From the IMG/VR virus record IMGVR_UViG_3300032782_000001, positions 310,001 to 374,000 of that record: a stretch of DNA of 64,000 nt; one strand, given 5' to 3'. The notes under the pieces are model-generated. The model was not told where the DNA came from. It was given only the letters and a program-made list of their open reading frames with translations, and searched no databases. The position numbers and the translations under genes are program-made. Of this stretch, positions 8,538 to 28,261 are shown piece after piece. Position 1 is the first letter of the stretch, and each line of letters begins with the position of its first letter.

Positions 8538-9773
8538 CTACTTCTTGGAATTCGTAGGAAGATCTTCCTCAACTTCTTCTTCGTCTTCGGATTCTTCCGA
8601 TTCTGGTTCTTCCTCTTCTTCGGGCGATACTTGTTCCTCTTCCTCCTCGGATTCTAGATCCAGAGTTTCATCCTTTGAAGCTTCGGAATCTTCCACCGGG
8701 GGTTCAATTTCAGTAATTTCGACCTCTTCGGGTTCAGTTTCCGTCTCTGGTGCCTCTTCCCAATCAATTTCAACATCCGCATCTTCAGATTCGACATCTT
8801 CAAGAGGAACTTCGGCGGCCCCTTCCAGACGATCCCACTCGGAATCTATAACATCAAGTAATTCTTTCTCATCAAGCCCCCAGTTTTCATCAGTGACTTC
8901 TTGGACGAATCCATCTAGGCGCTTGAGGACTGCATAAGCATGCTTGCAAAGCCAGTATTTCCTGTCAGGATCGCGTTCATTAGGCGGACCGGCAGTACCT
9001 TCAGGATTTCCCAGCAGAAAGTTATTCTCTTTAGCATGGAACTCAGGACCATTCCATCGCCAGAAAGGGCAAGTACAAGACATTGCGACTTGATTGACGT
9101 CAGATAAGGACGCCCGCACAGTTTTGGCGCCGTTCCCGCAATTAACGGAAAAAGTGAAAACTCTGCTACGTTTATCGTATGAAACGAGTTTAACGTCGCA
9201 AGATTTGGCATTGGATCGAATTTTCTCCGGAGCTCGCGGCTCTAGAGCCTCCGGTTTCAACGCGAGTCGAACCAAAAGTATGGACGAATGGCGTACAGGC
9301 TTTTCTTTGGATCTGTATGGATAATCCCAATACTGCGTCATGTCTACGTCTGACATATACGAAGTATCGGTCGGATCCTGGACATTTTCATCGAAATCAT
9401 ACTCTTGATGATGCGTCATGTCGTCCGCATCATCAATTTCGAAAATTGAACCGGGTTCCGAACTCGGAACAGTTGGTTCGTTGTCATCATAAACAAACGT
9501 TTTGGTGCCGAAATAATCGGCTTCTTCCGTTTCACCAGTAGGACTCGTACCATCCGCTGTCCTAATTGAAGCAATGCGGCTTGCAATTCTAGCAATCCTA
9601 CTAGCCGCCACTCGCTCTACTTTGATCGGAATCAAAAAGAGGGGTTTGAGATGATCAGGAATAGCTACTGCGAAACTCAAAATATCAGGAAATACCTCCT
9701 GACATTTGAAAGCGTAGATCGCGGCCTCACTGAGGACGAACCCATGGGGGAAGTCGTCATTGTTCATATTCAC
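8538..9773 (-). CDS. SWIM-type Zn-finger protein with acidic tail
   Basis: CTCPFW...CKH motif; Glu-rich C-terminus; RIASRIARIASRIASIRTA repeat. Confidence 0.7.
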   Translation of the reverse strand: MNMNNDDFPHGFVLSEAAIYAFKCQEVFPDILSFAVAIPDHLKPLFLIPIKVERVAASRIARIASRIASIRTADGTSPTGETEEADYFGTKTFVYDDNEPTVPSSEPGSIFEIDDADDMTHHQEYDFDENVQDPTDTSYMSDVDMTQYWDYPYRSKEKPVRHSSILLVRLALKPEALEPRAPEKIRSNAKSCDVKLVSYDKRSRVFTFSVNCGNGAKTVRASLSDVNQVAMSCTCPFWRWNGPEFHAKENNFLLGNPEGTAGPPNERDPDRKYWLCKHAYAVLKRLDGFVQEVTDENWGLDEKELLDVIDSEWDRLEGAAEVPLEDVESEDADVEIDWEEAPETETEPEEVEITEIEPPVEDSEASKDETLDLESEEEEEQVSPEEEEEPESEESEDEEEVEEDLPTNSKK

Positions 9774-10123
9774 TCATCGACTACAGGAAGGCCCGTCCTG
9801 CGCGGCATACGGATCCTGACTTCTTCAAGAACTCTCTCTAATTCATCAACCTTTTCCGGTCGAAGAGTTTGACGGAGTTCCTCGTAGTCGATCTTATTAA
9901 CGGCCATAGCCGCAGCTTCCAAAGCTCTCTCGAGCTTCAGAAGAGTCTGTGGGACAGCGTAAATAGTGTCGCCGGCTACAGCGTAGAAGTGATCCCGTTT
10001 GGTGCTTGCGTTAACGAGATCTAGAGCATGAGCAATGTGCCCCTTAAGCTCGTCGCAACGAAGTCGGGCATCAGAGATCTCTTCTTGGATGCAAACCATC
10101 GCGCCGGCAGTCCTGATCCTCAT
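9770..10123 (-). CDS. Hypothetical helical protein
   Basis: 117 aa; 4-bp overlap with the downstream gene. Confidence 0.6.
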   Translation of the reverse strand: MRIRTAGAMVCIQEEISDARLRCDELKGHIAHALDLVNASTKRDHFYAVAGDTIYAVPQTLLKLERALEAAAMAVNKIDYEELRQTLRPEKVDELERVLEEVRIRMPRRTGLPVVDE

Positions 10124-10160
10124 AGGGCTACCGGCGCCCGATCACAAAAGTCTTGAAGAC

Positions 10161-11408
10161 TCAGCCGCCAAATTGCTGCGGAAATTCCCTCTCGAGGGTG
10201 CGACGCATCTGGTCCCCTTCAGCCGCGTAGAGCGCCTCGAGGAAAGTAGGAGTAGCTCCGTGCTTCTTAACACGCTCCATGCGCTCCGCGAGCTTGCCTT
10301 CAAACGACCAATCCTTGGGGAACTTCGGATCAATCCGACGTGCCATCCGGATCTTGGGCGGAAGATTAGTATCTACTTCCACGGGTGTAGCTACGGCCGG
10401 TTTGGCTGCCGGTTTGGCTGCCGGTTTGGCTGCCATTTTAGTAGCCTTCGAGGTCACCTTGGGCTGCGCCACGGGTTTGGCGGCAACCTTCTTTGCCGGA
10501 GCATGCTTCTTTGCCGGAGGATCCTTGGTAGCCACACGAGCATGGCCGTTAACATGTCCATTCTGACGATTCCGGATATTGCTCGTATCTTGAACGTCAA
10601 TACCTTCTGCAGAATGATTGCGGCTACTGTGACGGACTTGTCCGATGTATTGACCGCCGTCCTCGTCCCCATCATAGACCTGTTCGCGATCCACGTTTCC
10701 GACATTCATTCGAATGTCGATGCCTTCCTGATGGACATTACGACCAGCTCGATGGACCCTGCCAGCACCGAAATCCACGTGTTGGGAACGCTCAATATCC
10801 TTGGCTTTTCCGGGTTCCTTTAGGATGTCCACCTTGCCAATGTTAGCAGGAGTCATGACACGGCCGATGGTCCGGCCATCCTGCTGGTCAATGTCGCTCA
10901 TGCTCGGGTTAAGAACCCGCTGACCGGCATTCGGATTGATGGGAGCACGGAAATTGACCTGACGGTCGTCATCCTGAACCACTCCCCGACGGTTATTGGT
11001 GTGATTGAGATGACCAGCAATTCGGCCACGGTCATCCCGGGGAAGTTTCTGTCGATCGGTCACAGTCAAAACCGTTTCCTCGTCCAGGCTTTCTGTGGCC
11101 ATGCTCTGAGGCTGAGTCCTCTGAACTCGACTCAGATCGGTAGTCTTGCTTTGAGACTTCGCAACAGCCCGAGAAGTATTGAAAGCGGGCGGTACATAGT
11201 CGTGATCCGGGTTGATTCGAGCCCAGTCGCTACGGATGGCCCCTCGAAGGGTCGGGGTTGGGAATTCAGTCCCAGAATAACGACAGACGCTTCCATCGTA
11301 TTCGAATTCATCACCCTTCTGAATAGTAATTTCATCTTTGCCACCAATACGAATCTTCATATTGGCAAAGAACTTCAGATACTCGCCACGCTTCCATTGG
11401 ACGTCCAT
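10161..11408 (-). CDS. Hypothetical protein with histone-H1-like Lys/Ala/Pro tract
   Basis: 415 aa; AAGGAG RBS; AAKP repeats. Confidence 0.7.
   Translation of the reverse strand: MDVQWKRGEYLKFFANMKIRIGGKDEITIQKGDEFEYDGSVCRYSGTEFPTPTLRGAIRSDWARINPDHDYVPPAFNTSRAVAKSQSKTTDLSRVQRTQPQSMATESLDEETVLTVTDRQKLPRDDRGRIAGHLNHTNNRRGVVQDDDRQVNFRAPINPNAGQRVLNPSMSDIDQQDGRTIGRVMTPANIGKVDILKEPGKAKDIERSQHVDFGAGRVHRAGRNVHQEGIDIRMNVGNVDREQVYDGDEDGGQYIGQVRHSSRNHSAEGIDVQDTSNIRNRQNGHVNGHARVATKDPPAKKHAPAKKVAAKPVAQPKVTSKATKMAAKPAAKPAAKPAVATPVEVDTNLPPKIRMARRIDPKFPKDWSFEGKLAERMERVKKHGATPTFLEALYAAEGDQMRRTLEREFPQQFGG
10396..10434. repeat. 12-bp coding tandem repeat (GCCGGTTTGGCT x3; encodes AAKP)
   Basis: Read directly from the sequence. 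Confidence 0.9.
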
Positions 11409-19487: not shown

Positions 19488-21803
19488 TCAGATTTCGATC
19501 TTCTTTTCCTTTTGCTCCACCTTGCCTTCAATGGACTGACCATCGTCCATGTCCACGAGCAAAGTGTTCTCGTCCAAACTCTTGAACTCGGTGAACCAGA
19601 CCTGACCGACGATGACGGAGAAGATCTGCTTAGCCTTCTCTGCAATCATTCCACGACGTTGCCTGTCTGCGGCCTTCTGGATGGGACGGAGCCAATCTTC
19701 GAACGCTTTGGTTTGATCTGATGCTTTTTTGTAAGCGTCAGACGCCATGAAATTGTCCACTTCAAGGATGGCGCGCCCCATGAGAACCGTCGGTCCATTC
19801 GGTTTGCCCTTCGCGAGCTTCTCTTTGGCTTCCTTGAGGCTCGGAAGACTTGAGAAGCCCTTGAGGCTCACAGTCATCTGCTTCGCCATATAGAAATCGC
19901 GTGCGTCTGCTTGAACGCTCTTCGGACCGAATCCGGAGTAGTCGGTGAACCCCTGTTCCTTCAGCCAATCAGCAGCCTCTTGTCCGTACTGCTCGATAAA
20001 GCCAGCACTCTTCTTCGTTCCAACCAGATCCTTAAGGACCGAGTTGTAAACCTTCTGCGAAGCTTGAACCTTCGTGAGCTCCCATTCGTTCTGGAATAGG
20101 ACTTTGGCAGAGACCGCTTTGACCATTTGCCGGTTGATGACAGGAAGGGACCTGAAGCTGATCAGGGTCACGTCCCCATCGGACTTGATAACGTCATCCC
20201 CAACCAGCCCTTGTTTGTGGATAGCAAAGAGCTTCTCCAACGTGGCTGCCGCCAATTTCACGGGCACAGTATCTACGTTTACCAGACCATCCTTGATGAC
20301 GGCGTAGTTGCGGTAAACGAAAGTCGGGAATTTCGCCGGGAGTTTGGCTTTGAGACCATCCGGGAGACGGCCGCTGATATCCACAGTTCCAGTCCTCTTG
20401 ACCTGAATACTGACGTTCGGGAACTCCTCGTTAAAGACGAGATTTGAAATAGAATATCCATCCGGTGCAGGTTCTGCTTCGAATTTCAAAGGAGCAGGCT
20501 TGTTTGAGATAGAAGCGATTCGCGCAGAGATATCTGCGACCTTCTTGGCATCCTTCGTCTTCTTCATCTCATCGGCGAGCTTATCTACTTCTGCTTGTTC
20601 TTCAGCAGTCAATACCGTCGAGGAATCTACTCGAGCCCGGGAGATCCGATCGTATTTGAAACTGGGATGATCCAGGAGAACTCGATTCTCTTCGTTCTCC
20701 GAGAGAAGGTTGAGCATGTCAAGAACCGTGAAGGCATCGTCACGCGGAATTTTCTTTGGATCGTATCCCTTAGTCAACCGTTGCTTCTCGTCAAAGACAG
20801 CGGCTTTAGCCAAGTCCATGAATTCTGAGTATTTCTGCTTGCCGAAGAGTCCACCAAATTTCTCGATGAACGCAACATCCCCCGTGAGTTTCAAGAAGGG
20901 GAGAACAACATCCGGCTTCATGCGAATGGAGAAGAGAGAAATGGCTGCATATGCTGCACCCACTTCATAAGCGTCCGTCTTCTTTCCAACGAGAGCAGGA
21001 GAGAGGTAGTAAACCACGTTAGCATTCTCAGGAACAGAAACCTTTCCGTCTGTGAGTCCGAAAGTAATGAGGTCTCCACCGTCTTCCATCCAAGCGAAAC
21101 CACCGATCGGATCACCCGTCACTGAGACTTCAATGCGCTTCCCTCCAAGTTGCTGCTTTTGCATCGCAGCTTCGAACAAGGGCGCATATTTATCAAAATT
21201 TTCAGAGAAGATGAGGGTGCCGCCTGCCTTCTCTGCCATGGAAGTGAGCAAGGGCCTGTCGGCATAGTAGCCGTATTCAACGAAGGTGGCCGAAGAAAGG
21301 CCACCAGCGGCCTTCTCGACTGCTTTGAGAATATCAGGACGTGGCCACTGATTGTCGCAACCATCGGACATGAAGAACAGGGCAAAACAGCTCCCAGGAC
21401 GCTTCTTCGATACTCGTTCTACGAGCTTGGAAGCCTCTTCTAAAGGCTCCTTGAATCCGGTAAGACAAACCGGTTTGAGCCACCTGTCGATTGCAGAATT
21501 GACTTCCTTGAGGTCTGCAAGCGTGGAAACGGGCTCCGCTTCGAGCAAAGTGCCGAATTGACCCTTGCCACTGAACCACACGATAGAGATCGTGTCCTTT
21601 TCCTTCAGGAGCTTAGGAAGCTTTTTCTTGAGCTGTTCCCTGATTTGGGGGAGCTCATACGACATGCTTCCAGAACAATCGATTACAGCAATGTGATTGA
21701 CCGGCACCTCGGCGGGCTTTGCTGGGGTAGCCTTATTGAGCTCCTGCCGAACGAGGTAAAGAGAATCCGAAACTTTGAAAGAAGTCTGCATGCCGGTCTC
21801 CAT
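19488..21803 (-). CDS. Large vWA-domain protein
   Basis: MIDAS DCSGS plus FFMSDG; 771 aa; divergent from the TROVE-like operon. Confidence 0.85.
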   Translation of the reverse strand: METGMQTSFKVSDSLYLVRQELNKATPAKPAEVPVNHIAVIDCSGSMSYELPQIREQLKKKLPKLLKEKDTISIVWFSGKGQFGTLLEAEPVSTLADLKEVNSAIDRWLKPVCLTGFKEPLEEASKLVERVSKKRPGSCFALFFMSDGCDNQWPRPDILKAVEKAAGGLSSATFVEYGYYADRPLLTSMAEKAGGTLIFSENFDKYAPLFEAAMQKQQLGGKRIEVSVTGDPIGGFAWMEDGGDLITFGLTDGKVSVPENANVVYYLSPALVGKKTDAYEVGAAYAAISLFSIRMKPDVVLPFLKLTGDVAFIEKFGGLFGKQKYSEFMDLAKAAVFDEKQRLTKGYDPKKIPRDDAFTVLDMLNLLSENEENRVLLDHPSFKYDRISRARVDSSTVLTAEEQAEVDKLADEMKKTKDAKKVADISARIASISNKPAPLKFEAEPAPDGYSISNLVFNEEFPNVSIQVKRTGTVDISGRLPDGLKAKLPAKFPTFVYRNYAVIKDGLVNVDTVPVKLAAATLEKLFAIHKQGLVGDDVIKSDGDVTLISFRSLPVINRQMVKAVSAKVLFQNEWELTKVQASQKVYNSVLKDLVGTKKSAGFIEQYGQEAADWLKEQGFTDYSGFGPKSVQADARDFYMAKQMTVSLKGFSSLPSLKEAKEKLAKGKPNGPTVLMGRAILEVDNFMASDAYKKASDQTKAFEDWLRPIQKAADRQRRGMIAEKAKQIFSVIVGQVWFTEFKSLDENTLLVDMDDGQSIEGKVEQKEKKIEI

Positions 21804-22130: not shown

Positions 22131-23996
22131 ATGCAGAAGGAAAATCTCGGACCTGCTGAGAGGATCATCAACACCATCCTGGCCTATTCGGATCACATGG
22201 TCCATAACCGGCCTGGAGTCGTTTCCCCGGACCCGACGTCGGCGACTGGTGTGAAGTGGGTGTTCGTGACCCACAAGACGGAAGACGGAAAGAAGGTCGT
22301 CTACGCCTTGGACAAGGTTGGCAAGAAGACCATCCGTCGAAAGCTCGGCGTCATGGGCGAGGACCGAAAGGTTCGTGATGACGCCAATCGCGTCATCGGT
22401 GAATATCGAGATGCCGGCATCTTTCCCGAGGTCGCAACTTGGCTTTACGGCCAAGTTGCGGAGGTGTGGAAGATCGATCATGAGTTCGCGGCTCGATGGG
22501 CCAGCTACCAATACGCCCAGGAGCATCGCGACATGAAGGCCGTTCTGGCTGCGTTCATGCTCGTGCAGTCCCGAAAGGGCGATCCTGTGATCGACGATGG
22601 CAAGGTAGCCTTCTACGACGAAGACTTCCGTGACGTCGGCGAGGCTATGATGCTCAGGTACAAGAAGGGCGACAAGCATGGGCTGCGTCCGAAGGACTTG
22701 CTTCGTATTCGGGACGTTCTCATGGTCCCGGGCGTGGCGGACATCAATCGCAAGCTCGGGTTCGGAAAGTCGGCCCGCAAGCCGTTCCTCGGCCGCTGGG
22801 AGAAGGCGGTCGAGAAGTGGTTGAAATTCCGGGAAGTCAATCCGAAAATGTTGGAAGGGCTCATCAAGGAGGGCTACAAGTCCACCGTCATGCAGCTCGC
22901 CCAGCTCATCGGTTACAAGCCGGAGTCGGATAAATTCTTCCATGCGCTTGGGTGGAAGCAGGTTCAGGCTAAGGATGGCCGTCGGGGTCTCGCGATTGGT
23001 CAGGTCCAGAGCGGCACGGACTCATGGGAAGGTATGTCCGAAGCCGAGGTCTGTGAAAAGATCGTGAAGGAAAAGACCGGCTTCAAGCGTCTCATCGGCC
23101 TCGTTCCGAAGGAGGTCGGCATGACTCGCGCCGTGATTGCGGCGGCGATCGAAGCTGGATCCTTGTCCGACAAGGACTTGGTCATCATGTCCGCCACGCT
23201 CGAAGAGCTTGGATTGCTCCAGGACCCGGATGTCCGTAAGCGTTGGGAGAAGGCTCTCAAGGCTGCTGAAGACATGCGGGCCGCAAACATTGCTTCGAGG
23301 GTCAAGTCTAAGGACGTCCAAGAGAAGCTCCAGGAAGCGGCTGACACGGCTGTTCAAAAGGCTGTCGAAGAGGTCAGCAGGGACATGCGTGTCTACTTCA
23401 TGGTCGACATCTCGGGGTCCATGGAAGGTGCAATCGAGGCGGCCAAGGATCACGTGGCGAAATTCCTTCAGGCATTCCCCGAAGACAAGATCCACGTATC
23501 CGTCTTCAACACTATCGGTCGAGAAGTGAAGGTCAAGCACCGTTCGGCTGCGGGAGTGAAGAACGCCTTTGAGGGTATTAGGGCGGAAGGTGGAACTTCA
23601 TATGCAGCAGGCGTAAGGGCCCTCCAAGGCCATAAGCCGCTTGCAAACGAAGATGTTTTGTTCATTTTCATTGGAGATGAGCAAGATAACACCGAACTCG
23701 CGGGTACCATCAGGGCTTCGGGTCTGAACCCCATGGCTTTCGGACTCGTGCCGGTCTTCGCGAAGCATTACGGACGCGGAAACCGCGTGACGACGGCAGC
23801 GTCAGAGCTCAAGATCCCGTGCTTCGAGATCGATGAAAAGACCTTCGCTGACCCGTACGCTATCCCGCGTGCAATCCGGGCTCTCATCGCGGCCACCCCC
23901 GTGAACCGTAGTCCGGAAAAGATCGTTCAGCGTGTCTCGCTCGTAGAGAACATCCTTAAAACGGATCTGATTACGAAGCCGGAGTGGGCTGCCTGA
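22131..23996 (+). CDS. TROVE/Ro60-like helical-repeat protein with C-terminal vWA domain
   Basis: Helical Lys-rich N-terminal region (EFAARWASY..RDMKAVLAAFML; VMQLAQLIGYKP), then vWA MIDAS DISGS, GGTS and IGDEQ. This is the Ro60 architecture. GGAG RBS before ATG 22131. vWA call strong, TROVE call moderate. Confidence 0.65.
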   Translation: MQKENLGPAERIINTILAYSDHMVHNRPGVVSPDPTSATGVKWVFVTHKTEDGKKVVYALDKVGKKTIRRKLGVMGEDRKVRDDANRVIGEYRDAGIFPEVATWLYGQVAEVWKIDHEFAARWASYQYAQEHRDMKAVLAAFMLVQSRKGDPVIDDGKVAFYDEDFRDVGEAMMLRYKKGDKHGLRPKDLLRIRDVLMVPGVADINRKLGFGKSARKPFLGRWEKAVEKWLKFREVNPKMLEGLIKEGYKSTVMQLAQLIGYKPESDKFFHALGWKQVQAKDGRRGLAIGQVQSGTDSWEGMSEAEVCEKIVKEKTGFKRLIGLVPKEVGMTRAVIAAAIEAGSLSDKDLVIMSATLEELGLLQDPDVRKRWEKALKAAEDMRAANIASRVKSKDVQEKLQEAADTAVQKAVEEVSRDMRVYFMVDISGSMEGAIEAAKDHVAKFLQAFPEDKIHVSVFNTIGREVKVKHRSAAGVKNAFEGIRAEGGTSYAAGVRALQGHKPLANEDVLFIFIGDEQDNTELAGTIRASGLNPMAFGLVPVFAKHYGRGNRVTTAASELKIPCFEIDEKTFADPYAIPRAIRALIAATPVNRSPEKIVQRVSLVENILKTDLITKPEWAA

Positions 23997-24177: not shown

Positions 24178-24471
24178 ATGGGGTGGGCCTCAGGCCACAT
24201 CCAAAAGCTGATTGCGGGTGAAACCGTGCATTTCCGACCCCACGGCAATTCCATGTTGCCGAGGATCAAGTCGGGTCAACTTTGCACGGTTTCACCCGTA
24301 AGTCTGGATGACGTTAAAGTAGGTGACGTCATCCTTTGCAAGGTGCACGGACGCGAATTTCTTCACCTTGTCTCGGCAATCCGTGGTGGTCAATTGCAAA
24401 TCTCGAACAATCACGGGCACATCAACGGGTGGATTGGGCCAAAGTCGGTCTACGGGAAACTGGTGGAATAA
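24178..24471 (+). CDS. S24/S26 peptidase-like small protein
   Basis: GNSMLPRIKSGQ...GDVILCKV..FLHLV. Confidence 0.7.
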   Translation: MGWASGHIQKLIAGETVHFRPHGNSMLPRIKSGQLCTVSPVSLDDVKVGDVILCKVHGREFLHLVSAIRGGQLQISNNHGHINGWIGPKSVYGKLVE

Positions 24472-25493
24472 TGGGCTGGCGGAACCTTCTGCAAGAAAAG
24501 GAAGAACTCATCGTTCTGCCGTGGCTTGGGGGTCGAACGCTCAGGTCCGGTCCACGTGCGTGGCATTTGGACGGGAAGCTCCCTGCTGAACATGGTTGGT
24601 ACACTTTCAAACTCATGGGACGGAAAGCTATCCTCGGTGATTCCTACGACGAGGAATTGGCGAAGGAGCCGTGCGTACAGCCTCCAGGTTCCTTAATGTG
24701 TGAAGTGACTGGCTATCTTGTCGGTGACCGGCTCATCCTAGATAATGCCAATGTGGATCCGGATCCTTCGAAAATTGCGGAACAGTCGGAGACTGTGCAT
24801 CTCATCGAAGATGGACTGGATAGATTCGCTCGTATCGAAGCTGGGCGAGCGTGTGAAGACGGCCCACTCATCTACAGCGGAATGGTGATGCCGTTAGGGC
24901 CTGAGGAGGAAGTCCTCCAAGCATTTCTCGAACAAAAGTCATCTGTAGCAAACATCAAGGGCGTAGTTCCTGCACTGGACGCTGCCTTCCGTATGGAAGT
25001 TTGGCAGCGAATTGAAGCTGCCAAACGACGTGCAGAACTTGAGAGGATTCGCAAAGAAGAGGAAGAGAAGAGGCGTATTGAGGAGAAACGCCGGGAAATT
25101 GTCGAGAAGCTCGGCGACGGAGCTGGTCGAAGGGCAATGGCTGCCATCGATTTCGATGAAGCTGCCAGGGCTGCATTTGTTGTTGGAAATGCTCAGTTCC
25201 TGGATAGTCGGAAGAGCGCTCAAAAAGGCGAGATGGTCGTCCGCTTCCGTCTCGATAATCGTAGATTCGAATGCACCTGTGACAAGTTGACACTTAGAGT
25301 TATTGATGCGGGCATCTGTCTAGTTGATCACCGGACGCACGAGAAGGGTGATGGTTATTTCACGCTCGAAAGTTTACCTGGGGTTATTAGGCAAGCCCAG
25401 CGTGAGGGTAAACTCGTAGTCTTCCGTCGCGTGGACGGAGAAAACTATCCAAGGGGAGGAAATGATGATGACGATGAAGATTACGACGATTGA
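24471..25493 (+). CDS. Coiled-coil protein with putative divergent E2-like C-terminal domain
   Basis: Start ATG overlaps the upstream TAA. DAGICL recalls the E2 active-site GxICL; lies next to the JAB, Ubl and E1 genes. Confidence 0.45.
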   Translation: MGWRNLLQEKEELIVLPWLGGRTLRSGPRAWHLDGKLPAEHGWYTFKLMGRKAILGDSYDEELAKEPCVQPPGSLMCEVTGYLVGDRLILDNANVDPDPSKIAEQSETVHLIEDGLDRFARIEAGRACEDGPLIYSGMVMPLGPEEEVLQAFLEQKSSVANIKGVVPALDAAFRMEVWQRIEAAKRRAELERIRKEEEEKRRIEEKRREIVEKLGDGAGRRAMAAIDFDEAARAAFVVGNAQFLDSRKSAQKGEMVVRFRLDNRRFECTCDKLTLRVIDAGICLVDHRTHEKGDGYFTLESLPGVIRQAQREGKLVVFRRVDGENYPRGGNDDDDEDYDD

Positions 25494-25502
25494 GGTAACA
25501 TC

Positions 25503-26057
25503 ATGAGCATGGAAGCAGGAGTCGTCGTAGGAAAAGACGGTAAGGCAATTCATTGGCATCTTCCGGAAGAGAGGACCGGCGGATCTCTGCCCGATTCTCA
25601 GGCTCTCTGGGATTTCATCTGGAAGAATCGAAATGAAATTATGGGGATCGCCCACAGTCATCCTGGACGGGGACTTCCGGGGCCATCACACACGGATGTA
25701 ACCACTTTTGCCGCCATTGAGGATGGTCTCGGGAAGAGGCTCCTTTGGTGGATTACAAGCGAAGACAAACTTGTAGTCATCAAATGGGTAGGTCCTGGAA
25801 AGCACACTTATTCATCCAGGGAGATCTCGAGTAATGACCCCGAATGGTTAAAGCCACTCCGAAACGCATCTCACGAACTTTCAGAAGCTCGACTCGAAGA
25901 AGTTTGCCAGTATGTAACGGAGACTCACCGGGAAGCTGCTCGACGGGTGTCTGCAGGAAAAGCGGCGCTCGAGGACATGGTAGTGTCAGTCCTCAACGGG
26001 CTCCCCCATGCCGATCCAGATGAGATTCGGAAGAAGATCCTGGATTCGGTGAAATAA
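25503..26057 (+). CDS. JAB/MPN+ metallopeptidase
   Basis: N-terminal Glu (MEAG) and HSHP...PSHTD JAMM motif. Confidence 0.85.
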   Translation: MSMEAGVVVGKDGKAIHWHLPEERTGGSLPDSQALWDFIWKNRNEIMGIAHSHPGRGLPGPSHTDVTTFAAIEDGLGKRLLWWITSEDKLVVIKWVGPGKHTYSSREISSNDPEWLKPLRNASHELSEARLEEVCQYVTETHREAARRVSAGKAALEDMVVSVLNGLPHADPDEIRKKILDSVK

Positions 26058-26102
26058 ATCCAAAACTTGGGAACGTAAGTTCCTCTTCTAAGGAGAATCG
26101 AA

Positions 26103-26372
26103 ATGAACGAAATGGTAATCGAGGCAGGACAGGCGAGGGTCAACATCACGTGGCAGGGTCAGAACGGGGACATGCCTGGCGCTGTCCATTACGACTCGAC
26201 GGACGGCGACGTCCGACAGTGGGTCACGGAGGCCGTTCGCACGGGTGGGGTGCCTGGTATTCGTGCTGACGCCGCCGCGAATTTCACGGACTTCGTCGTG
26301 GAGAGGTTCCCGTCGACGCAGGATAGGCCCTTCAACCTGATCCAGGTCAGGCCGAAGACGCCGTTCGGTTGA
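26103..26372 (+). CDS. Ubiquitin-like small protein (putative)
   Basis: 89 aa; strong AAGGAG RBS; ends LIQVRPKTPFG with a terminal Gly; between JAB and E1. Confidence 0.65.
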   Translation: MNEMVIEAGQARVNITWQGQNGDMPGAVHYDSTDGDVRQWVTEAVRTGGVPGIRADAAANFTDFVVERFPSTQDRPFNLIQVRPKTPFG

Positions 26373-26800
26373 TGGAGAAGAATTCGGAAGAAGAAGCCTG
26401 GAAACAGGCTGTCGACCTCTGGAAAAAACTCGCCCAGATCCGAGGCGTGGCGTACTCCGCCATGTTCGCAGTCAGGGGTGAGATGATAGAAGAAGAAAAA
26501 GCGGAACTCCTTGAGGACCTCGAAAAAGTCCTCAAGGAGACTGCTGTTGACTTCCCCAATGGGGTGGATTGGAACGCTCACGAAAACGGTGAGTTCAAGC
26601 TTCTTCCTAAGAAGATAGAGGATTACATGGAAGCCAAGATCAAGACAACTGGATTCAAAGTGGAAATTCAGTTGAACGAATATGAGGCAGATTCCATTCG
26701 TCGGGCCGTAATCGGCCGTGATGATCGGGAAGCTCAGAAGCTTATGCAACAACTTTCCGAGACCGTTTGGAAGGCTGTGGTTAACGCTGTAAACAAGTGA
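26372..26800 (+). CDS. Hypothetical helical protein
   Basis: TGATG coupling with the Ubl gene; overlaps the E1 start. Confidence 0.6.
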   Translation: MEKNSEEEAWKQAVDLWKKLAQIRGVAYSAMFAVRGEMIEEEKAELLEDLEKVLKETAVDFPNGVDWNAHENGEFKLLPKKIEDYMEAKIKTTGFKVEIQLNEYEADSIRRAVIGRDDREAQKLMQQLSETVWKAVVNAVNK

Positions 26801-27381
26801 TCTCCATGAAGAACATCACCATCGTGGGAGTAGGAGCACTCGGATCGCATTTCGTGCAATTCGCGCGCGGGTTCCCGGCTGCTCTCAAGATTATTGACTT
26901 TGATCGAGTGGAACAGAAGAACGTCGCGTCACAGTTCCACGCGAAGACCTCGGTCGGCAAAGGAAAGGTCCTCGGTCTCCAACAGACCGTCCAGCTCCTC
27001 TGGGGTATGAAGCTTACCACAGTGCCTCATAAGTTGACTTCCGAAAATGAAGCACAAATTCTCGGTGGGGCCGATCTCATCGTAGATTGCCTCGACAATG
27101 GGGCAGCACGACGCATCGTCCAGGGATTTGTTCGAAAGAATACTATCCCGTGCGTTCACGGGGCCTTGGCCGCAGACGCCGCCTTCGGGCGGGTCGTATG
27201 GGACGAGTCATTCGCAATTGACGATGAGCCGGGAGAAGGTGCGCCTACCTGCGAAGACGGCGTTCATCTCCCTTTCATCGCCCTCGCCTCGTCTTTACTC
27301 GCTCGCGCAGTACAGGTCTTCATCACGGACGGGAAGAAGATCGGATACCAAATCAGACCAAACGGCGTCGTCCAAACGTGA
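26797..27381 (+). CDS. ThiF/E1-like adenylating enzyme
   Basis: VGVGALGS, IDFDRVEQKN, GKV, DLIVDCLDN..ARR; candidate catalytic Cys in APTCEDG. Confidence 0.9.
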   Translation: MISMKNITIVGVGALGSHFVQFARGFPAALKIIDFDRVEQKNVASQFHAKTSVGKGKVLGLQQTVQLLWGMKLTTVPHKLTSENEAQILGGADLIVDCLDNGAARRIVQGFVRKNTIPCVHGALAADAAFGRVVWDESFAIDDEPGEGAPTCEDGVHLPFIALASSLLARAVQVFITDGKKIGYQIRPNGVVQT

Positions 27382-27384
27382 GTC

Positions 27385-27413
27385 TTGACAGAGACACTCG
27401 TCGAGTGTATTCT
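27385..27413 (+). promoter_or_regulatory. Sigma70-type promoter for the ncRNA array, with a palindromic spacer
   Basis: TTGACA-17 nt-TATTCT; ACACTCG-T-CGAGTGT spans the spacer and the -10 edge. Confidence 0.85.
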
Positions 27414-27430
27414 GGTGGAAAGCACAAATC

Positions 27431-27509
27431 CAGAGAGCACGTCCAACAAGCGGAACTCACAAGCTAGGATACAGCCAAAACCAGTTTCGCCACTCGGGCG
27501 CGCTCTCTG
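27431..27509 (+). ncRNA. Y-RNA-like unit 1 (minimal module)
   Basis: Closing stem CAGAGAGCACGTCC/GGGCGCGCTCTCTG; inner stem GCGGAACT/AGTTTCGC; ACAAGC and ACC motifs. Confidence 0.7.
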
Positions 27510-27515
27510 AATTCT

Positions 27516-27644
27516 GCCGGACATGAGGACTGGCGTCCTCGATTCCCCCATACGGAATTTTCCCGGTACCGCTCCTCGGTCCTGAAAGGGACCACCTAAC
27601 GGTTCCTACAAGCAAGGAAGGTTCGATTCCTTCGTCCGGCTCCA
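27516..27644 (+). tRNA. Atypical tRNA(CAT)-like RNA with a 57-nt variable-arm insert (unit 2)
   Basis: Acceptor GCCGGAC/GTCCGGC + T-CCA; D arm GAGGAC-TGGC-GTCCTC; anticodon arm GATTCC-CCCATAC-GGAATT; T arm GAAGG-TTCGATT-CCTTC. Confidence 0.75.
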
Positions 27645-27764
27645 GAGCGTCCAGTTAGCGGTGCTTACAAGCAAGATGCTCCTAGGTGGAGCGTCGGATT
27701 CTGCATCCGAAGGGGCGGCTTCGAAAACCGCTCTTGCACAACCAGCATCGGCCCTCGGACGCTC
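27645..27764 (+). ncRNA. YrlA-like RNA, module plus tRNA-mimic domain (unit 3)
   Basis: GAGCGTCC/GGACGCTC; CGGTGCT/AGCATCG; GCAAGA/TCTTGC closes D-like, anticodon-like and TTCGA-containing T-like hairpins. Confidence 0.75.
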
Positions 27765-27778
27765 GTAGTCTCGTAGTT

Positions 27779-27811
27779 TTTGACCCGACCAAGATTCTTG
27801 GTCGGGTCAAA
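27779..27811. terminator. Perfect 16-bp inverted repeat between convergent units (bidirectional terminator)
   Basis: TTTGACCCGACCAAGA-T-TCTTGGTCGGGTCAAA. Confidence 0.8.
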
Positions 27812-27817
27812 TCGTCT

Positions 27818-28261
27818 TTAGGATTCCATGACATCTCGGATTTCGGTCATGGATTCTTTGGACCAATATTCTTTGAGCTTCTTGGTTGCATAAGCCGCCC
27901 ACCTTCGAATTTTCGGGCGACCTTTTATGCATTGTGTATATTTATATTCAGAAAAACTGTTTTGGTAATTTTCATGATGATAACAGAAATCGAAAGAAAA
28001 AGAACAGCCATTTCCGTTGCCATAAATGGCAACGGAACCATTAATCTTGCCCACTTCCTTTACTCCGAGATGAATATCTGCGGACACAATCGTTCGGAAG
28101 TCGAAATTATCTCGATAAATCCGGCAATTGGAAACTTGGAAACCAGCTCGTTCTAAGGGACGAATGGCAGCTTTAAGGCAATCTTCACCATAAGCGATAG
28201 ATATATCCCTCTTAGGTGAGGGCCTAACGTCTTTCTTGTGCCTGAGTTTCCTGATGGTCAT
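27818..28261 (-). CDS. Hypothetical protein with C-terminal IRDVMES tag
   Basis: 147-aa ORF. Confidence 0.65.
   Translation of the reverse strand: MTIRKLRHKKDVRPSPKRDISIAYGEDCLKAAIRPLERAGFQVSNCRIYRDNFDFRTIVSADIHLGVKEVGKINGSVAIYGNGNGCSFSFDFCYHHENYQNSFSEYKYTQCIKGRPKIRRWAAYATKKLKEYWSKESMTEIRDVMES

What the first reader, a model, noticed from the sequence alone, without database searches (positions are those of the whole stretch)
27516..27644. CCA-ending tRNA(CAT) with a protein-binding module grafted into its variable arm
It has a 7-bp acceptor stem, encoded CCA and a canonical T arm, but also a 6-bp D stem with a 4-nt loop (tRNA-Sec-like), C at position 33, and a 57-nt variable region (27560-27616) that is the permuted module. 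Unlike YrlA-type RNAs, its acceptor end is free. Inference: it could be aminoacylated while tethered to the Ro-like protein, acting as a decoy for anticodon nucleases, delivering the complex to ribosomes or synthetases, or donating an amino acid.
Basis: partly seen in the sequence, partly recalled or inferred. Interest (0 to 1): 0.85.

Follow-up and report, generated by a model that had tools for sequence, protein, structure and literature searches.

The report
Phage tRNA-like RNA with handle arm
This is a real, conserved RNA of huge phages: a tRNA-shaped molecule whose variable arm has been replaced by a 42-nt structured "handle", one of about a hundred relatives encoded next to a Ro60-like protein gene, and probably a tRNA mimic or adaptor rather than a working tRNA.

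Summary
Window 27516-27644 (+) folds as a cloverleaf. It has a 7-bp acceptor stem, U73 plus an encoded CCA, a 6-bp/4-nt D arm, the anticodon loop CCCAUAC (C33, CAU), a canonical T arm and a 57-nt variable region.

It is not an oddity. A covariance model finds 94 distinct relatives in 45 of 63 loci from related huge phages. All six helices covary, including both helices of the insert. The unpaired motifs CUC and ACAAG are near-invariant.

The same module occurs in three topologies:
- capped, inside the variable arm (this RNA);
- open, with a capped acceptor stem;
- open, joined through the acceptor stem.

The family usually starts 50-470 nt after a conserved operon: TROVE/VWA Ro60-like protein, p340, JAB, small protein p89, E1.

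End features match those of ordinary phage tRNAs (G1, U-1, and the 3' tails CCA/CUA/CUG/CCG). Position 33 is non-U in 37% of callable members, against 7% in ordinary tRNAs. ARAGORN and Rfam do not call the window copy.

Best reading: a tRNA-derived, Y-RNA-like scaffold with a protein handle. It is not YrlA, and probably not a decoder. Protein binding, end processing and charging remain untested.

The parts
27385..27413 (+). Sigma-70-like promoter (TTGACA, 17 nt spacer, TATTCT) directly after the E1 stop codon. It is the likely start of the three-RNA transcription unit.
   Evidence: 10 of 12 consensus matches. A consensus match only; transcription has not been shown.
27431..27509 (+). RNA 1: the open module without a tRNA body. 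It has an outer 8-bp stem and helix I (27440-27444 with 27497-27501). The internal loop is AACAA on one side and CACUC on the other. Helix II is 27450-27457 with 27484-27491. CACAAGC and ACC flank a short apical loop.
27516..27644 (+). The finding: a long-arm tRNA-like RNA of the CAU type, with a 7-bp acceptor stem, 6-bp D stem, C33, canonical T arm and U73-CCA.
   Evidence: (131 bits; it is a seed sequence)
27565..27606 (+). The capped module inside the variable region. Its parts are:
- outer helix: 27565-27571 with 27600-27606;
- internal loop: 27572-27577 (CUCCUC, with invariant CUC at 27575-27577) and 27594-27599;
- hairpin: 27578-27583 with 27588-27593, with a GAAA loop.
   Evidence: (outer helix 84% paired, hairpin 96.7% paired; all 13 pairs covary)
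27607..27616 (+). Single-stranded linker UACAAGCAAG. Its ACA-G positions are invariant in 94 of 94 members. It precedes the T arm.
27645..27770 (+). RNA 3: the open module (helix I 27645-27652 with 27763-27770) enclosing a natural-order tRNA-like domain. It begins immediately after the CCA of the finding.
   Evidence: (RF00005, 30.8 bits at 27671-27738)
27779..27811 (+). A 15-bp hairpin that is the likely terminator of the RNA cluster. It may also serve the convergent minus-strand gene at 27818-28261.
22131..23996 (+). Gene for a 621-aa protein made of a TROVE-like helical domain and a VWA domain (Ro60-like architecture). It is the first gene of the conserved operon.
24471..27381 (+). Rest of the operon:
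- p340 (24471-25493), conserved, fold unknown;
- JAB (25503-26057), conserved;
- p89 (26103-26372), conserved, ends in Gly;
- p142 (26369-26800), specific to this window;
- ThiF/E1 (26797-27381), conserved.

Best explanation
Window 27516-27644 is one member of a previously undescribed family of tRNA-derived non-coding RNAs of huge phages.

**What it is.** The RNA keeps a tRNA body: a 7-bp acceptor stem, a D/T elbow with G18 G19 and UUCGANU, and an anticodon arm. A 42-nt two-helix module sits in the variable region. The module's unpaired CC, CUC and ACAAG nucleotides are near-invariant.

**Most likely mechanism.**
1. The three-RNA cluster is transcribed from its own promoter downstream of the E1 gene (inferred).
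2. RNase P cuts 5' of G27516, and the 3' end is matured as for the phage's ordinary tRNAs (inferred from shared end signatures).
3. The module serves as a sequence-specific protein handle. The most probable partner is the co-encoded TROVE/VWA Ro60-like protein, or another product of the conserved operon TROVE/VWA - p340 - JAB - p89 - E1 (inferred from synteny and from the Y RNA precedent).
4. The tRNA body acts as a mimic that brings that protein to, or competes for, tRNA-recognising factors. It does not decode on the ribosome (inferred from relaxed position 33, degenerate anticodon loops in part of the family, and paralogy to ordinary tRNAs of the same phage).

**Shown:** the structure, family conservation and covariation, the three topologies, the synteny, and the tRNA-like end signatures.

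**Not shown:** expression, processing, protein binding, and charging.
For: **The structure is real and conserved**
- Cloverleaf with module in the minimum-free-energy fold, z = -3.7.
- 94 distinct long-arm members lie in 45 of 63 loci of related huge phages, all on the protein's strand.
- Covariation: 91.8% of cells paired against 54.7% shuffled; 35 of 36 pairs have double changes; both module helices are supported.
- The same helices come from a plain MAFFT/RNAalifold alignment.

**The module looks like a recognition site**
- Invariant unpaired positions: CUC in 93 of 94, A-C-A-G of ACAAG in 94 of 94, and C49 in 90 of 94.
- The same module occurs open in other RNAs: 62 on the plus strand against 6 on the minus-strand control. 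It occurs in three topologies.

**Link to the operon**
- In about 30 loci the first member starts 50-470 nt after the E1 stop. In 5 loci the array abuts the VWA gene on its upstream side.
- The operon is conserved in nearly all 66 loci.
- The protein is Ro60/TROVE-like by fold: 9kop at E = 7e-8, 1yvr, 9l5y, 2i91, with full-length alignments. BFVD returns DUF2828 and DUF7788 relatives. The Atlas returns TROVE clusters.

**tRNA-type ends**
- G1 in 92 of 94 members.
- U at position -1 in 54% of the family and 53% of ordinary tRNAs, against a 22% background.
- The 3' tails rank identically in both sets: CCA > CUA > CUG > CCG.
- Members sit inside tRNA arrays, including five more in this phage's main array.

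**Not a standard decoder**
- Position 33 is non-U in 22 of 59 callable members, against 44 of 664 ordinary tRNAs.
- Some members have 8-9-nt anticodon loops or no anticodon arm.
- The window copy is not called by ARAGORN even with the insert removed.

**Precedent**
- Ro60-associated tRNA-like Y RNAs are encoded next to Ro60 genes in bacteria and phages. M. smegmatis YrlA is cut by RNase P and receives CCA in vivo (PMC4201824).
Against: - No expression or processing data exist. No RNA run could be listed.
- Protein binding rests on gene neighbourhood only.
- The TROVE likeness is weak. TM scores are 0.2-0.3. There is no Pfam TROVE hit and no sequence-profile hit to Ro60.
- The YrlA/Ro60 recognition motif GNCGAA(N)G is absent.
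- In this phage five members lie about 214 kb from the operon in the main tRNA array. In relatives the operon itself lies in or beside tRNA arrays, so part of the proximity could be shared location rather than function.
- The major subfamilies keep the discriminator expected for their anticodon: UCC with U in 9 of 9, GUA with A in 6 of 6, GUU with G in 5 of 5. Position 37 is a purine in 53 of 59. This is what one expects if synthetases still recognise them, so a role as chargeable tRNAs is not excluded.
- The next RNA begins directly at 27645. The 3' end may never be free.
Confidence: 0.55

Rival explanations
1. It is a genuine decoding tRNA (Met or Ile2, anticodon CAU) that carries an extra arm. 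The arm marks phage tRNAs for a phage protein (for protection, modification or sorting), and the RNA is still charged and used by ribosomes.
For: - The cloverleaf is complete, with a canonical T loop and G18 G19.
- Orthologues L004 12756-12883 and L002 14177-14304 have U33 and are called tRNA-Met(CAT) once the insert is removed. 66 of 94 members become callable after trimming.
- Discriminators match the anticodon in the Gly-, Tyr- and Asn-like subfamilies.
- Position 37 is a purine in 90% of callable members.
- End signatures are the same as in ordinary tRNAs.
Against: - The window copy has C33, U73 (ordinary CAU tRNAs of these phages mostly have A73) and a 6-bp D stem. It is not callable in any form.
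- Position 33 is non-U in 37% of the family, against 7% of ordinary tRNAs.
- Only 29 of 55 discriminators agree with those of ordinary tRNAs.
- Some members lack a proper anticodon arm.
- The phage already has ordinary tRNAs with the same anticodons, including four tRNA-Met(CAT).
- The same module is attached to bodies that cannot be charged, because the acceptor is capped or no tRNA body is present.
Confidence: 0.15
2. The acceptor end is never released. RNAs 1-3 (27431-27770), or at least the dimer 27516-27770, act as one multi-module RNA that binds two or three copies of the partner protein. The 'tRNA' is only an internal structural domain.
For: - The CCA at 27642-27644 is followed with no spacer by helix I of the next RNA.
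- This tandem arrangement is conserved: in 25 of 40 cases an open-module RNA starts within 10 nt of the tail of a long-arm member.
- A phage Ro60 forms dimers on its Y-like RNA (PMC12135203).
- One promoter and one terminator flank the three RNAs.
Against: - U at -1 and G1 are as frequent as in ordinary tRNAs, and the 3' tail spectrum is identical to theirs. Both are hard to explain without tRNA-type end maturation.
- Ordinary tRNAs in these arrays are also packed 1-7 nt apart, so abutment does not argue against cleavage.
Confidence: 0.2
3. The 57-nt insert is an intron that is spliced out to give a normal tRNA.
For: The insert interrupts an otherwise tRNA-like gene. Removing it makes many relatives callable as tRNAs.
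Against: - It lies in the variable region, not in the anticodon loop.
- It is far too small for a group I intron, and Rfam finds no intron family.
- It has a 6/6-nt internal loop, not a bulge-helix-bulge motif.
- Its helices and unpaired motifs are conserved and covary as a functional structure.
- The same module forms the ends of neighbouring RNAs, where it cannot be an intron.
Confidence: 0.02
4. The module has nothing to do with the operon. It is bound by a host factor or an unlinked phage factor, or it makes an RNA-RNA contact. The neighbourhood arises only because both the operon and these RNAs sit in tRNA arrays.
For: - Five members of this same phage lie in the main tRNA array, with no operon gene within 15 kb.
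- In relatives the operon is embedded in tRNA arrays.
- The one deposited GenBank phage with the protein (Rctr197k) has no member within 9 kb.
Against: - In this window the operon is far from the tRNA array (ARAGORN finds 0 tRNAs in 64 kb), yet it keeps its own RNA cluster right after E1.
- The position 50-470 nt after the E1 stop recurs in about 30 loci, even though insertions inside the operon vary.
- RNA-first searches recovered members only from phages that also carry the operon or an E1 homologue: 4 of the 5 that could be checked. None appeared in 100 bacterial loci.
Confidence: 0.08

Closest known systems
YrlA-type bacterial and phage Y RNAs (Ro60/Rsr-associated tRNA mimics; Chen et al. 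2014, PMC4201824; structure preprint 10.1101/312249)
   Same: - A non-coding RNA with a tRNA-like D/T elbow joined to a separate helical protein-binding module.
- Encoded within a few kb of a TROVE+VWA protein gene, on the same strand.
- Several copies per locus.
- Circular permutation of tRNA parts occurs.
- M. smegmatis YrlA can be cut by RNase P and receive CCA.
   Different: - Here the acceptor ends are the RNA's own ends, and a full anticodon arm is present.
- The module sits in the variable region, not at the anticodon-stem position.
- The Ro60 motif GNCGAA(N)G is absent.
- No Rfam Y RNA or YrlA hit is found.
- The partner protein is only a distant structural relative of Ro60.
- The operon carries JAB, E1 and a small Gly-ending protein, which are not known partners of Rsr.
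Class II tRNAs and tRNA-Sec (long variable arm; 6-bp D stem with 4-nt loop in tRNA-Sec)
   Same: An extra arm emerges between the anticodon and T arms. The D arm of the window copy is 6 bp with a 4-nt loop, as in tRNA-Sec.
   Different: - The variable region is 57 nt with an internal loop and invariant motifs, against at most about 21 nt in class II tRNAs.
- The acceptor/T arrangement is 7+5, not 8+5.
- The anticodon is CAU, not UCA.
- Position 33 is C.
- There is no Rfam tRNA-Sec hit.
tmRNA and viral tRNA-like structures (chargeable tRNA mimics with extra domains)
   Same: A tRNA-shaped acceptor/T domain with a CCA end is combined with a large non-tRNA domain. These are precedents for chargeable mimics that work with a dedicated protein (SmpB).
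   Different: - ARAGORN finds no tmRNA.
- There is no mRNA-like reading frame or pseudoknot ring.
- An anticodon arm is present.
- The extra domain is a single 42-nt arm.
Thermus phage phiLo Ro60 with Yrl1/Yrl2 (PMC12135203; PDB 9KOP, 9L5Y)
   Same: A phage-encoded Ro60-type protein with adjacent small RNAs that it binds. It is the top structural match of the window's protein.
   Different: - Yrl1 and Yrl2 are stem-bulge-stem Y RNAs with a CGAA motif and are not tRNA-like.
- The protein is a recognisable Ro60 homologue, whereas the window's protein is not recognisable by sequence.

Membership tests
Canonical tRNA (RF00005 / ARAGORN) | Detected by the standard tRNA models | tested here: not met
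   ARAGORN finds 0 genes in the window. Rfam gathering and local E<=10 scans give no hit on 27516-27644. The window copy is not called even after the insert is deleted.
Canonical tRNA (RF00005 / ARAGORN) | 7-bp acceptor stem, 5-bp T stem with a UUCRANY loop, and G18 G19 | tested here: met
   Across the family the acceptor is 98.5% paired and the T stem 99% paired. G18 occurs in 83 of 94 members.
Canonical tRNA (RF00005 / ARAGORN) | U33 and a purine at position 37 in a 7-nt anticodon loop | tested here: not met
   The window has C33 (27548) with A37. In the family, U33 occurs in 37 of 59 callable members, against 620 of 664 ordinary tRNAs.
Canonical tRNA (RF00005 / ARAGORN) | Variable region of 4-5 nt, or up to about 21 nt in class II tRNAs | tested here: not met
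   The variable region is 57 nt, 27560-27616.
Canonical tRNA (RF00005 / ARAGORN) | Aminoacylation and use in decoding | not testable with these tools
   No RNA data could be listed. Indirect evidence is mixed: the discriminator matches the anticodon in 29 of 55 members.
YrlA / bacterial Y RNA | GNCGAA(N0-1)G or GGUCCGA Ro60-recognition motif near the 5' end (PMC4201824) | tested here: not met
   The motif is absent from 27418-27822. It occurs in 4 of 94 family members.
YrlA / bacterial Y RNA | Permuted order T arm - closed acceptor stem-loop - D arm, with no anticodon loop and no free CCA (10.1101/312249) | tested here: not met
   The element has natural tRNA order, free ends and a full anticodon arm. 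Neighbouring RNAs in relatives do show the order T - capped acceptor - D, but they also have an anticodon arm.
YrlA / bacterial Y RNA | Encoded within about 4 kb of a Ro60 orthologue, on the same strand | tested here: inconclusive
   The element is on the same strand, 3.5 kb downstream of the TROVE/VWA-like gene, and the synteny recurs in about 30 loci. The protein is Ro60-like by fold search only, with TM 0.2-0.3. There is no Pfam TROVE hit.
YrlA / bacterial Y RNA | Bound by Ro60/Rsr | not testable with these tools
   Needs a pull-down or EMSA.
tRNA-Sec | 8+5 (or 9+4) acceptor/T helix, UCA anticodon, 6-bp D stem | tested here: not met
   The acceptor/T arrangement is 7+5 and the anticodon is CAU. 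Only the 6-bp/4-nt D arm matches. There is no RF01852 hit.
Intron-containing tRNA gene | A group I intron in the anticodon loop, or a bulge-helix-bulge motif at the exon-intron junctions | tested here: not met
   The insert lies in the variable region. It is 42-57 nt with a 6/6 internal loop, and Rfam finds no intron family. The module is conserved as a structure and is also used outside tRNA bodies.
Long-arm tRNA-like family of huge phages (defined here, model R1) | tRNA body, plus CC - helix - NNNCUC - hairpin - loop - helix - YACAAG before the T arm | tested here: met
   The window copy scores 131 bits, but it is a seed sequence. 88 further distinct members outside the six seed sequences score 35-106 bits. 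Covariation is and the invariant motifs.

The most novel reading that the evidence does not exclude
These RNAs may be chargeable, identity-bearing tRNA baits (Gly-, Tyr-, Asn-, Met-like and others). A Ro60-like ring would hold them by the variable-arm handle.

The phage would use them to intercept or sense host tRNA-directed weapons, such as anticodon nucleases, acceptor-end modifying toxins and aminoacyl-tRNA acetyltransferases. Alternatively they would couple an aminoacyl-tRNA-like substrate to the adjacent E1/JAB/small-protein machinery.

Changes at position 33 would keep the baits off the ribosome or make them uncleavable. This would be a new class of RNP: a tRNA with a built-in protein handle, existing in three circularly permuted forms.
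Probability: 0.15. Interest if true: 0.92.

Novelty: new variant of a known kind. Interest (0 to 1): 0.8.

Why it matters
The function of tRNA-like Y RNAs and of bacterial and phage Ro60 proteins is still largely open.

This family offers about a hundred natural variants in which a complete tRNA body, with recognisable identities (Gly, Tyr, Asn, Met and others), is fused to one conserved handle in three permuted topologies. It lies next to a conserved five-gene operon that also encodes an E1-like enzyme, a JAB peptidase and a small Gly-ending protein.

That makes several questions directly testable:
- which protein reads the CUC/ACAAG module;
- whether a tRNA mimic with a free CCA end is charged;
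- what huge phages gain from keeping such mimics beside 30-60 ordinary tRNAs.

It also matters for annotation. These genes are invisible to ARAGORN and Rfam, so tRNA arrays of huge phages contain unannotated RNA genes.

Tried and rejected
**Searches on the RNA**
- Rfam with gathering and permissive thresholds: the only hit is RF00005 at 27671-27738, in the neighbouring RNA. There is no Y RNA, YrlA, tRNA-Sec, tmRNA or intron hit.
- ARAGORN on the window: nothing.
- Megablast of the locus against deposited phages: nothing.
- RNA-seq runs: none could be listed. Only the source wetland DNA metagenome and one related DNA run were found. Read laying was therefore not used, since contigs of the source sample would add nothing.
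- The second assembly that holds the locus (L074) is identical to the window, so it is not independent.

**RNA-first pattern scans**
- Patterns built on ACAAGC...GGTTCGA are too loose.
- Only after filtering with the model did they help. They do not give a census.

**Searches on the proteins**
- Sequence and profile searches of the 621-aa protein against PDB sequences find only VWA domains.
- PHROGs and PADLOC give nothing useful for the VWA protein, p340, p89 or p142.
- p340 has a confident AlphaFold2 model but no PDB match better than E = 0.2. Weak dsRBD-like rows are not significant. The Atlas gives nothing for p340.

**Ideas dropped**
- That p142 is the E2 of a Bil-like or Cap2-like system: dropped because p142 is not conserved in any relative.
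- Apparent in-frame stops in seven p340 homologues: these are just their natural C-termini.
- That 'GUCC' in the module equals the metazoan GGUCCGA Ro site: dropped because only C78 and A79 are conserved across the family.
Full report
**1. What is at the coordinates**

The window is part of a 436-kb IMG/VR huge-phage contig from a wetland metagenome.

The stretch 27382-27817 holds no credible ORF. It lies between the stop codon of a ThiF/E1-like gene and a convergent minus-strand gene. A sigma-70-like promoter lies at 27385-27413 and a 15-bp hairpin at 27779-27811.

- acceptor stem 27516-27522 with 27634-27640;
- the dinucleotide AU, then a 6-bp D stem with the loop UGGC;
- anticodon stem AUUCC/GGAAU with the loop CCCAUAC (C33, CAU, A37);
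- a 57-nt variable region;
- T arm GAAGG-UUCGAUU-CCUUC;
- U73 and an encoded CCA.

The variable region is built as follows: CC; a 7-position outer helix; an internal loop (CUCCUC on one side, ACCUAA on the other); a 6-bp hairpin capped by GAAA; and the linker UACAAGCAAG.

ARAGORN calls no tRNA anywhere in the 64 kb. The Rfam gathering scan finds nothing. A permissive local scan finds only RF00005 at 27671-27738, which is the tRNA-like domain of the next RNA.

**2. The 'permuted module' claim**

Three copies of the same two-helix/internal-loop element lie in the cluster.

In RNA 1 (27431-27509) and RNA 3 (27645-27770) the order of parts is:
- helix I 5' strand;
- A-rich loop;
- helix II 5' strand;
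- YACAAGC;
- the apical part;
- (A)CC;
- helix II 3' strand;
- NNNCUC;
- helix I 3' strand.

In the finding, the second half comes first and helix I is closed by a tetraloop.

RNA 1 has no tRNA body. RNA 3 encloses a natural-order tRNA-like domain joined through its acceptor stem.

**3. It is a family, and the structure covaries**

The 621-aa protein encoded 3.5 kb upstream has more than 1,700 relatives, nearly all unnamed. I fetched 66 loci of huge phages that carry it.

In the first four relatives, many T loops that ARAGORN did not call turned out to belong to 108-142-nt RNAs with the same architecture.

A covariance model built from six of them finds 94 distinct long-arm members in 45 of 63 loci, all on the protein's strand.

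On the model-derived alignment:
- 91.8% of cells pair, against 54.7% in shuffles and 41-52% when partners are slid.
- 35 of 36 pairs show double changes.
- Pairing per helix: acceptor 98.5%, D 85%, anticodon 85%, module outer helix 84%, module hairpin 96.7%, T 99%.

A plain MAFFT/RNAalifold run on eight CAU-type members, not fitted to the model, gives the same six helices. 23 of its 28 pairs carry compensatory changes.

The following unpaired positions are near-invariant:
- C48-C49 before the module;
- C60-U61-C62 (93 of 94) on the 5' side of the internal loop;
- A93-C94-A95-G97 (94 of 94) after the module.

Conservation of unpaired nucleotides around covarying helices is the usual signature of a specific binding site. 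That is inference, not a test.

**4. Three topologies and a conserved tandem**

Relatives carry the same module in other arrangements.
- Open, with the tRNA parts in the order T arm, capped acceptor, D arm, anticodon arm. This is an exact circular permutation of the long-arm form (L002 13818-13962, L004 12608-12745 and others).
- Open, around a natural-order tRNA-like domain with a short acceptor stem, as in window RNA 3 (L005 4977-5075, L282 3727-3850).

A rule-based search finds 62 open modules on the plus strand against 6 on the minus-strand control in 58 loci.

In 25 of 40 cases the open RNA starts within 10 nt of the tail of a long-arm member. The window shows the same arrangement: A27644 is followed directly by G27645.

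**5. Is it handled like a tRNA?**

No RNA data could be found, so only sequence signatures are available.
- G1 occurs in 92 of 94 members.
- U at position -1 occurs in 54% of members and 53% of ordinary tRNAs of the same loci. The background frequency of T is 22%.
- The four commonest 3' tails have the same order in the family and in ordinary tRNAs: CCA, CUA, CUG, CCG.
- Encoded CCA occurs in 26 of 94 members and 252 of 635 ordinary tRNAs, so it is not a family trait.
- Members sit inside tRNA arrays with short spacers. The window's own phage has five more in its main array of 35 tRNAs, about 214 kb away (L282).

These shared signatures argue that RNase P and the normal 3' pathway act on these RNAs. 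Because the next RNA abuts the CCA, release of the 3' end is still unproven.

**6. Is it a working tRNA?**

With the module cut out, ARAGORN of 94 members. With the variable region trimmed to 5 nt, it of 94. The intact sequences give 2 of 94.

The window copy is never called. Its closest relatives, L004 12756-12883 and L002 14177-14304, become tRNA-Met(CAT).

Among callable members, position 33 is U 37, A 10, C 6 and G 6. In 664 ordinary tRNAs of the same loci it is U 620, C 42 and G 2. Position 37 is a purine in 53 of 59.

Some members have 8-9-nt anticodon loops or no anticodon arm.

Discriminators agree with ordinary tRNAs of the same anticodon in 29 of 55 cases. Agreement is perfect for UCC/U (9 of 9), GUA/A (6 of 6) and GUU/G (5 of 5). 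The window copy has U73, whereas ordinary CAU tRNAs here mostly have A73.

The phage already encodes ordinary tRNAs for the same anticodons.

Together this points to tRNA-derived mimics under relaxed decoding constraint. Some subfamilies still keep synthetase-type identity marks. Charging is neither shown nor excluded.

**7. The neighbouring genes**

tblastn shows a conserved operon in nearly all loci: 621-aa VWA protein, p340, JAB, p89, E1. p97 and p142 are specific to this window, so there is no conserved E2.

*The 621-aa protein.*
- Its only Pfam hit is VWA_2.
- Sequence and profile searches do not reach Ro60.
- Its AlphaFold2 model (pLDDT 82) has as best PDB matches the TROVE domain and Ro60 of Thermus phage phiLo (9kop, 9l5y) and Xenopus Ro60 (1yvr, 2i91). 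The alignments run over 510-545 columns with E = 7e-8 to 2e-5, but TM is only 0.2-0.3.
- BFVD gives full-length matches to viral DUF2828, DUF7788 and VWFA proteins.
- The Atlas feature search returns TROVE and DUF2828 clusters at a score of 0.78, which is a lead only.
- I call it Ro60-like in architecture, not an established Ro60 orthologue.

*The other operon proteins.*
- The E1 matches the E1 part of Cap2-type models.
- p340 has a confident model (pLDDT 86) with no significant PDB match.

*Synteny.*
- In about 30 loci the first long-arm RNA starts 50-470 nt after the E1 stop, although the operon length varies.
- In five loci the array abuts the VWA gene on its upstream side.

*RNA-first searches.*
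- These recovered members only from phages that also have the operon or an E1 homologue, in 4 of the 5 cases that could be checked.
- No member appeared in 100 bacterial loci.

*A caveat.* In relatives the operon lies within tRNA arrays, and this phage keeps five members away from the operon. Proximity is therefore not proof of partnership.

**8. Comparison with what is known**

The closest known systems are YrlA-type Y RNAs. These are tRNA mimics encoded near Ro60 in more than 250 bacteria and phages. They have a Ro60-binding stem formed by the RNA's two ends, a capped acceptor stem-loop, no anticodon loop and a GNCGAA(N)G motif. M. smegmatis YrlA is exceptional in being cut by RNase P and receiving CCA (PMC4201824; 10.1101/312249).

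The present RNA plausibly works like these, as a tRNA-shaped domain plus a protein handle. It fails the membership tests:
- the motif is absent;
- the topology differs;
- Rfam gives no hit;
- the partner protein is only distantly Ro60-like.

It is also not a tRNA-Sec (7+5 arrangement, CAU anticodon), not a tmRNA, and not an intron-bearing tRNA.

I found no paper in the searchable library that describes tRNA-like RNAs with such an arm in huge phages. That library is incomplete.

**9. Verdict**

The functional part (Ro tethering, charging, decoy) remains inference.

I rate it as a new variant of a known kind, the Ro60-associated tRNA mimic, with high interest. The most likely mechanism is a tRNA-processed mimic carrying a conserved protein handle for a product of the adjacent operon. 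Overall confidence is about 0.55.

Noticed in passing
L282 3108-4011 (same phage contig as the window, contig positions 96103-111006): This phage's main tRNA array holds 35 ordinary tRNAs. It also contains five more long-arm tRNA-likes (GUU-, UCC- and GAA-like, among others) and open-module RNAs. No operon gene lies within 15 kb.
   Followed up: partly
window 27644|27645, and 25 of 40 cases in relatives (e.g. L002 13818/13823, L003 6169/6175): A conserved tandem arrangement. An open-module RNA begins within 10 nt of the tail of a long-arm tRNA-like, so maturation of one 3' end would create the next 5' end. This recalls the proposal that YrlA arose from dimeric tRNA transcripts.
   Followed up: partly
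L004 16026-16390: A related huge phage encodes a complete bacterial type-A RNase P RNA (299.5 bits) a few kb from the operon and the tRNA array.
   Followed up: no
window 24471-25493 (p340): A protein conserved in essentially every operon. Its AlphaFold2 model is confident (pLDDT 86): an N-terminal beta domain, a roughly 70-residue helix, and a C-terminal alpha/beta domain with conserved cysteines. It has no significant PDB or Pfam match.
   Followed up: partly
window 27431-27509: A module-only RNA with no tRNA body that still keeps the flanking CACAAGC and ACC. This suggests that these single-stranded flanks belong to the recognition element.
   Followed up: partly
window 26103-26372 (p89) with 25503-26057 (JAB) and 26797-27381 (E1): A conserved triad of an E1-like enzyme, a JAB peptidase and a small protein ending in Gly. 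It looks like a ubiquitin-like or sulfur-carrier system, but no E2 is conserved. A link to the RNAs is unexplained.
   Followed up: no
window 19488-21803 (-): A second, 771-aa VWA protein (phrog_2426, E = 5e-177) is divergently placed upstream of the operon. It is present near the operon in only a few relatives.
   Followed up: no
L007-L072, ordinary tRNAs: About 6% (42 of 664) of ARAGORN-called ordinary tRNAs in these phages have C33. 60% lack an encoded CCA, and their tails are biased to CUA, CUG and CCG.
   Followed up: no
L311 (GenBank KX853510, Virus Rctr197k) 8989-10938: This is the only deposited phage record with a full-length relative of the protein; a second record, LR756511, matches only its VWA part. 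The gene is annotated merely as a misc_feature 'similar to conserved hypothetical protein'. It lies directly after a 33-tRNA array, and no long-arm RNA was found within 9 kb.
   Followed up: partly
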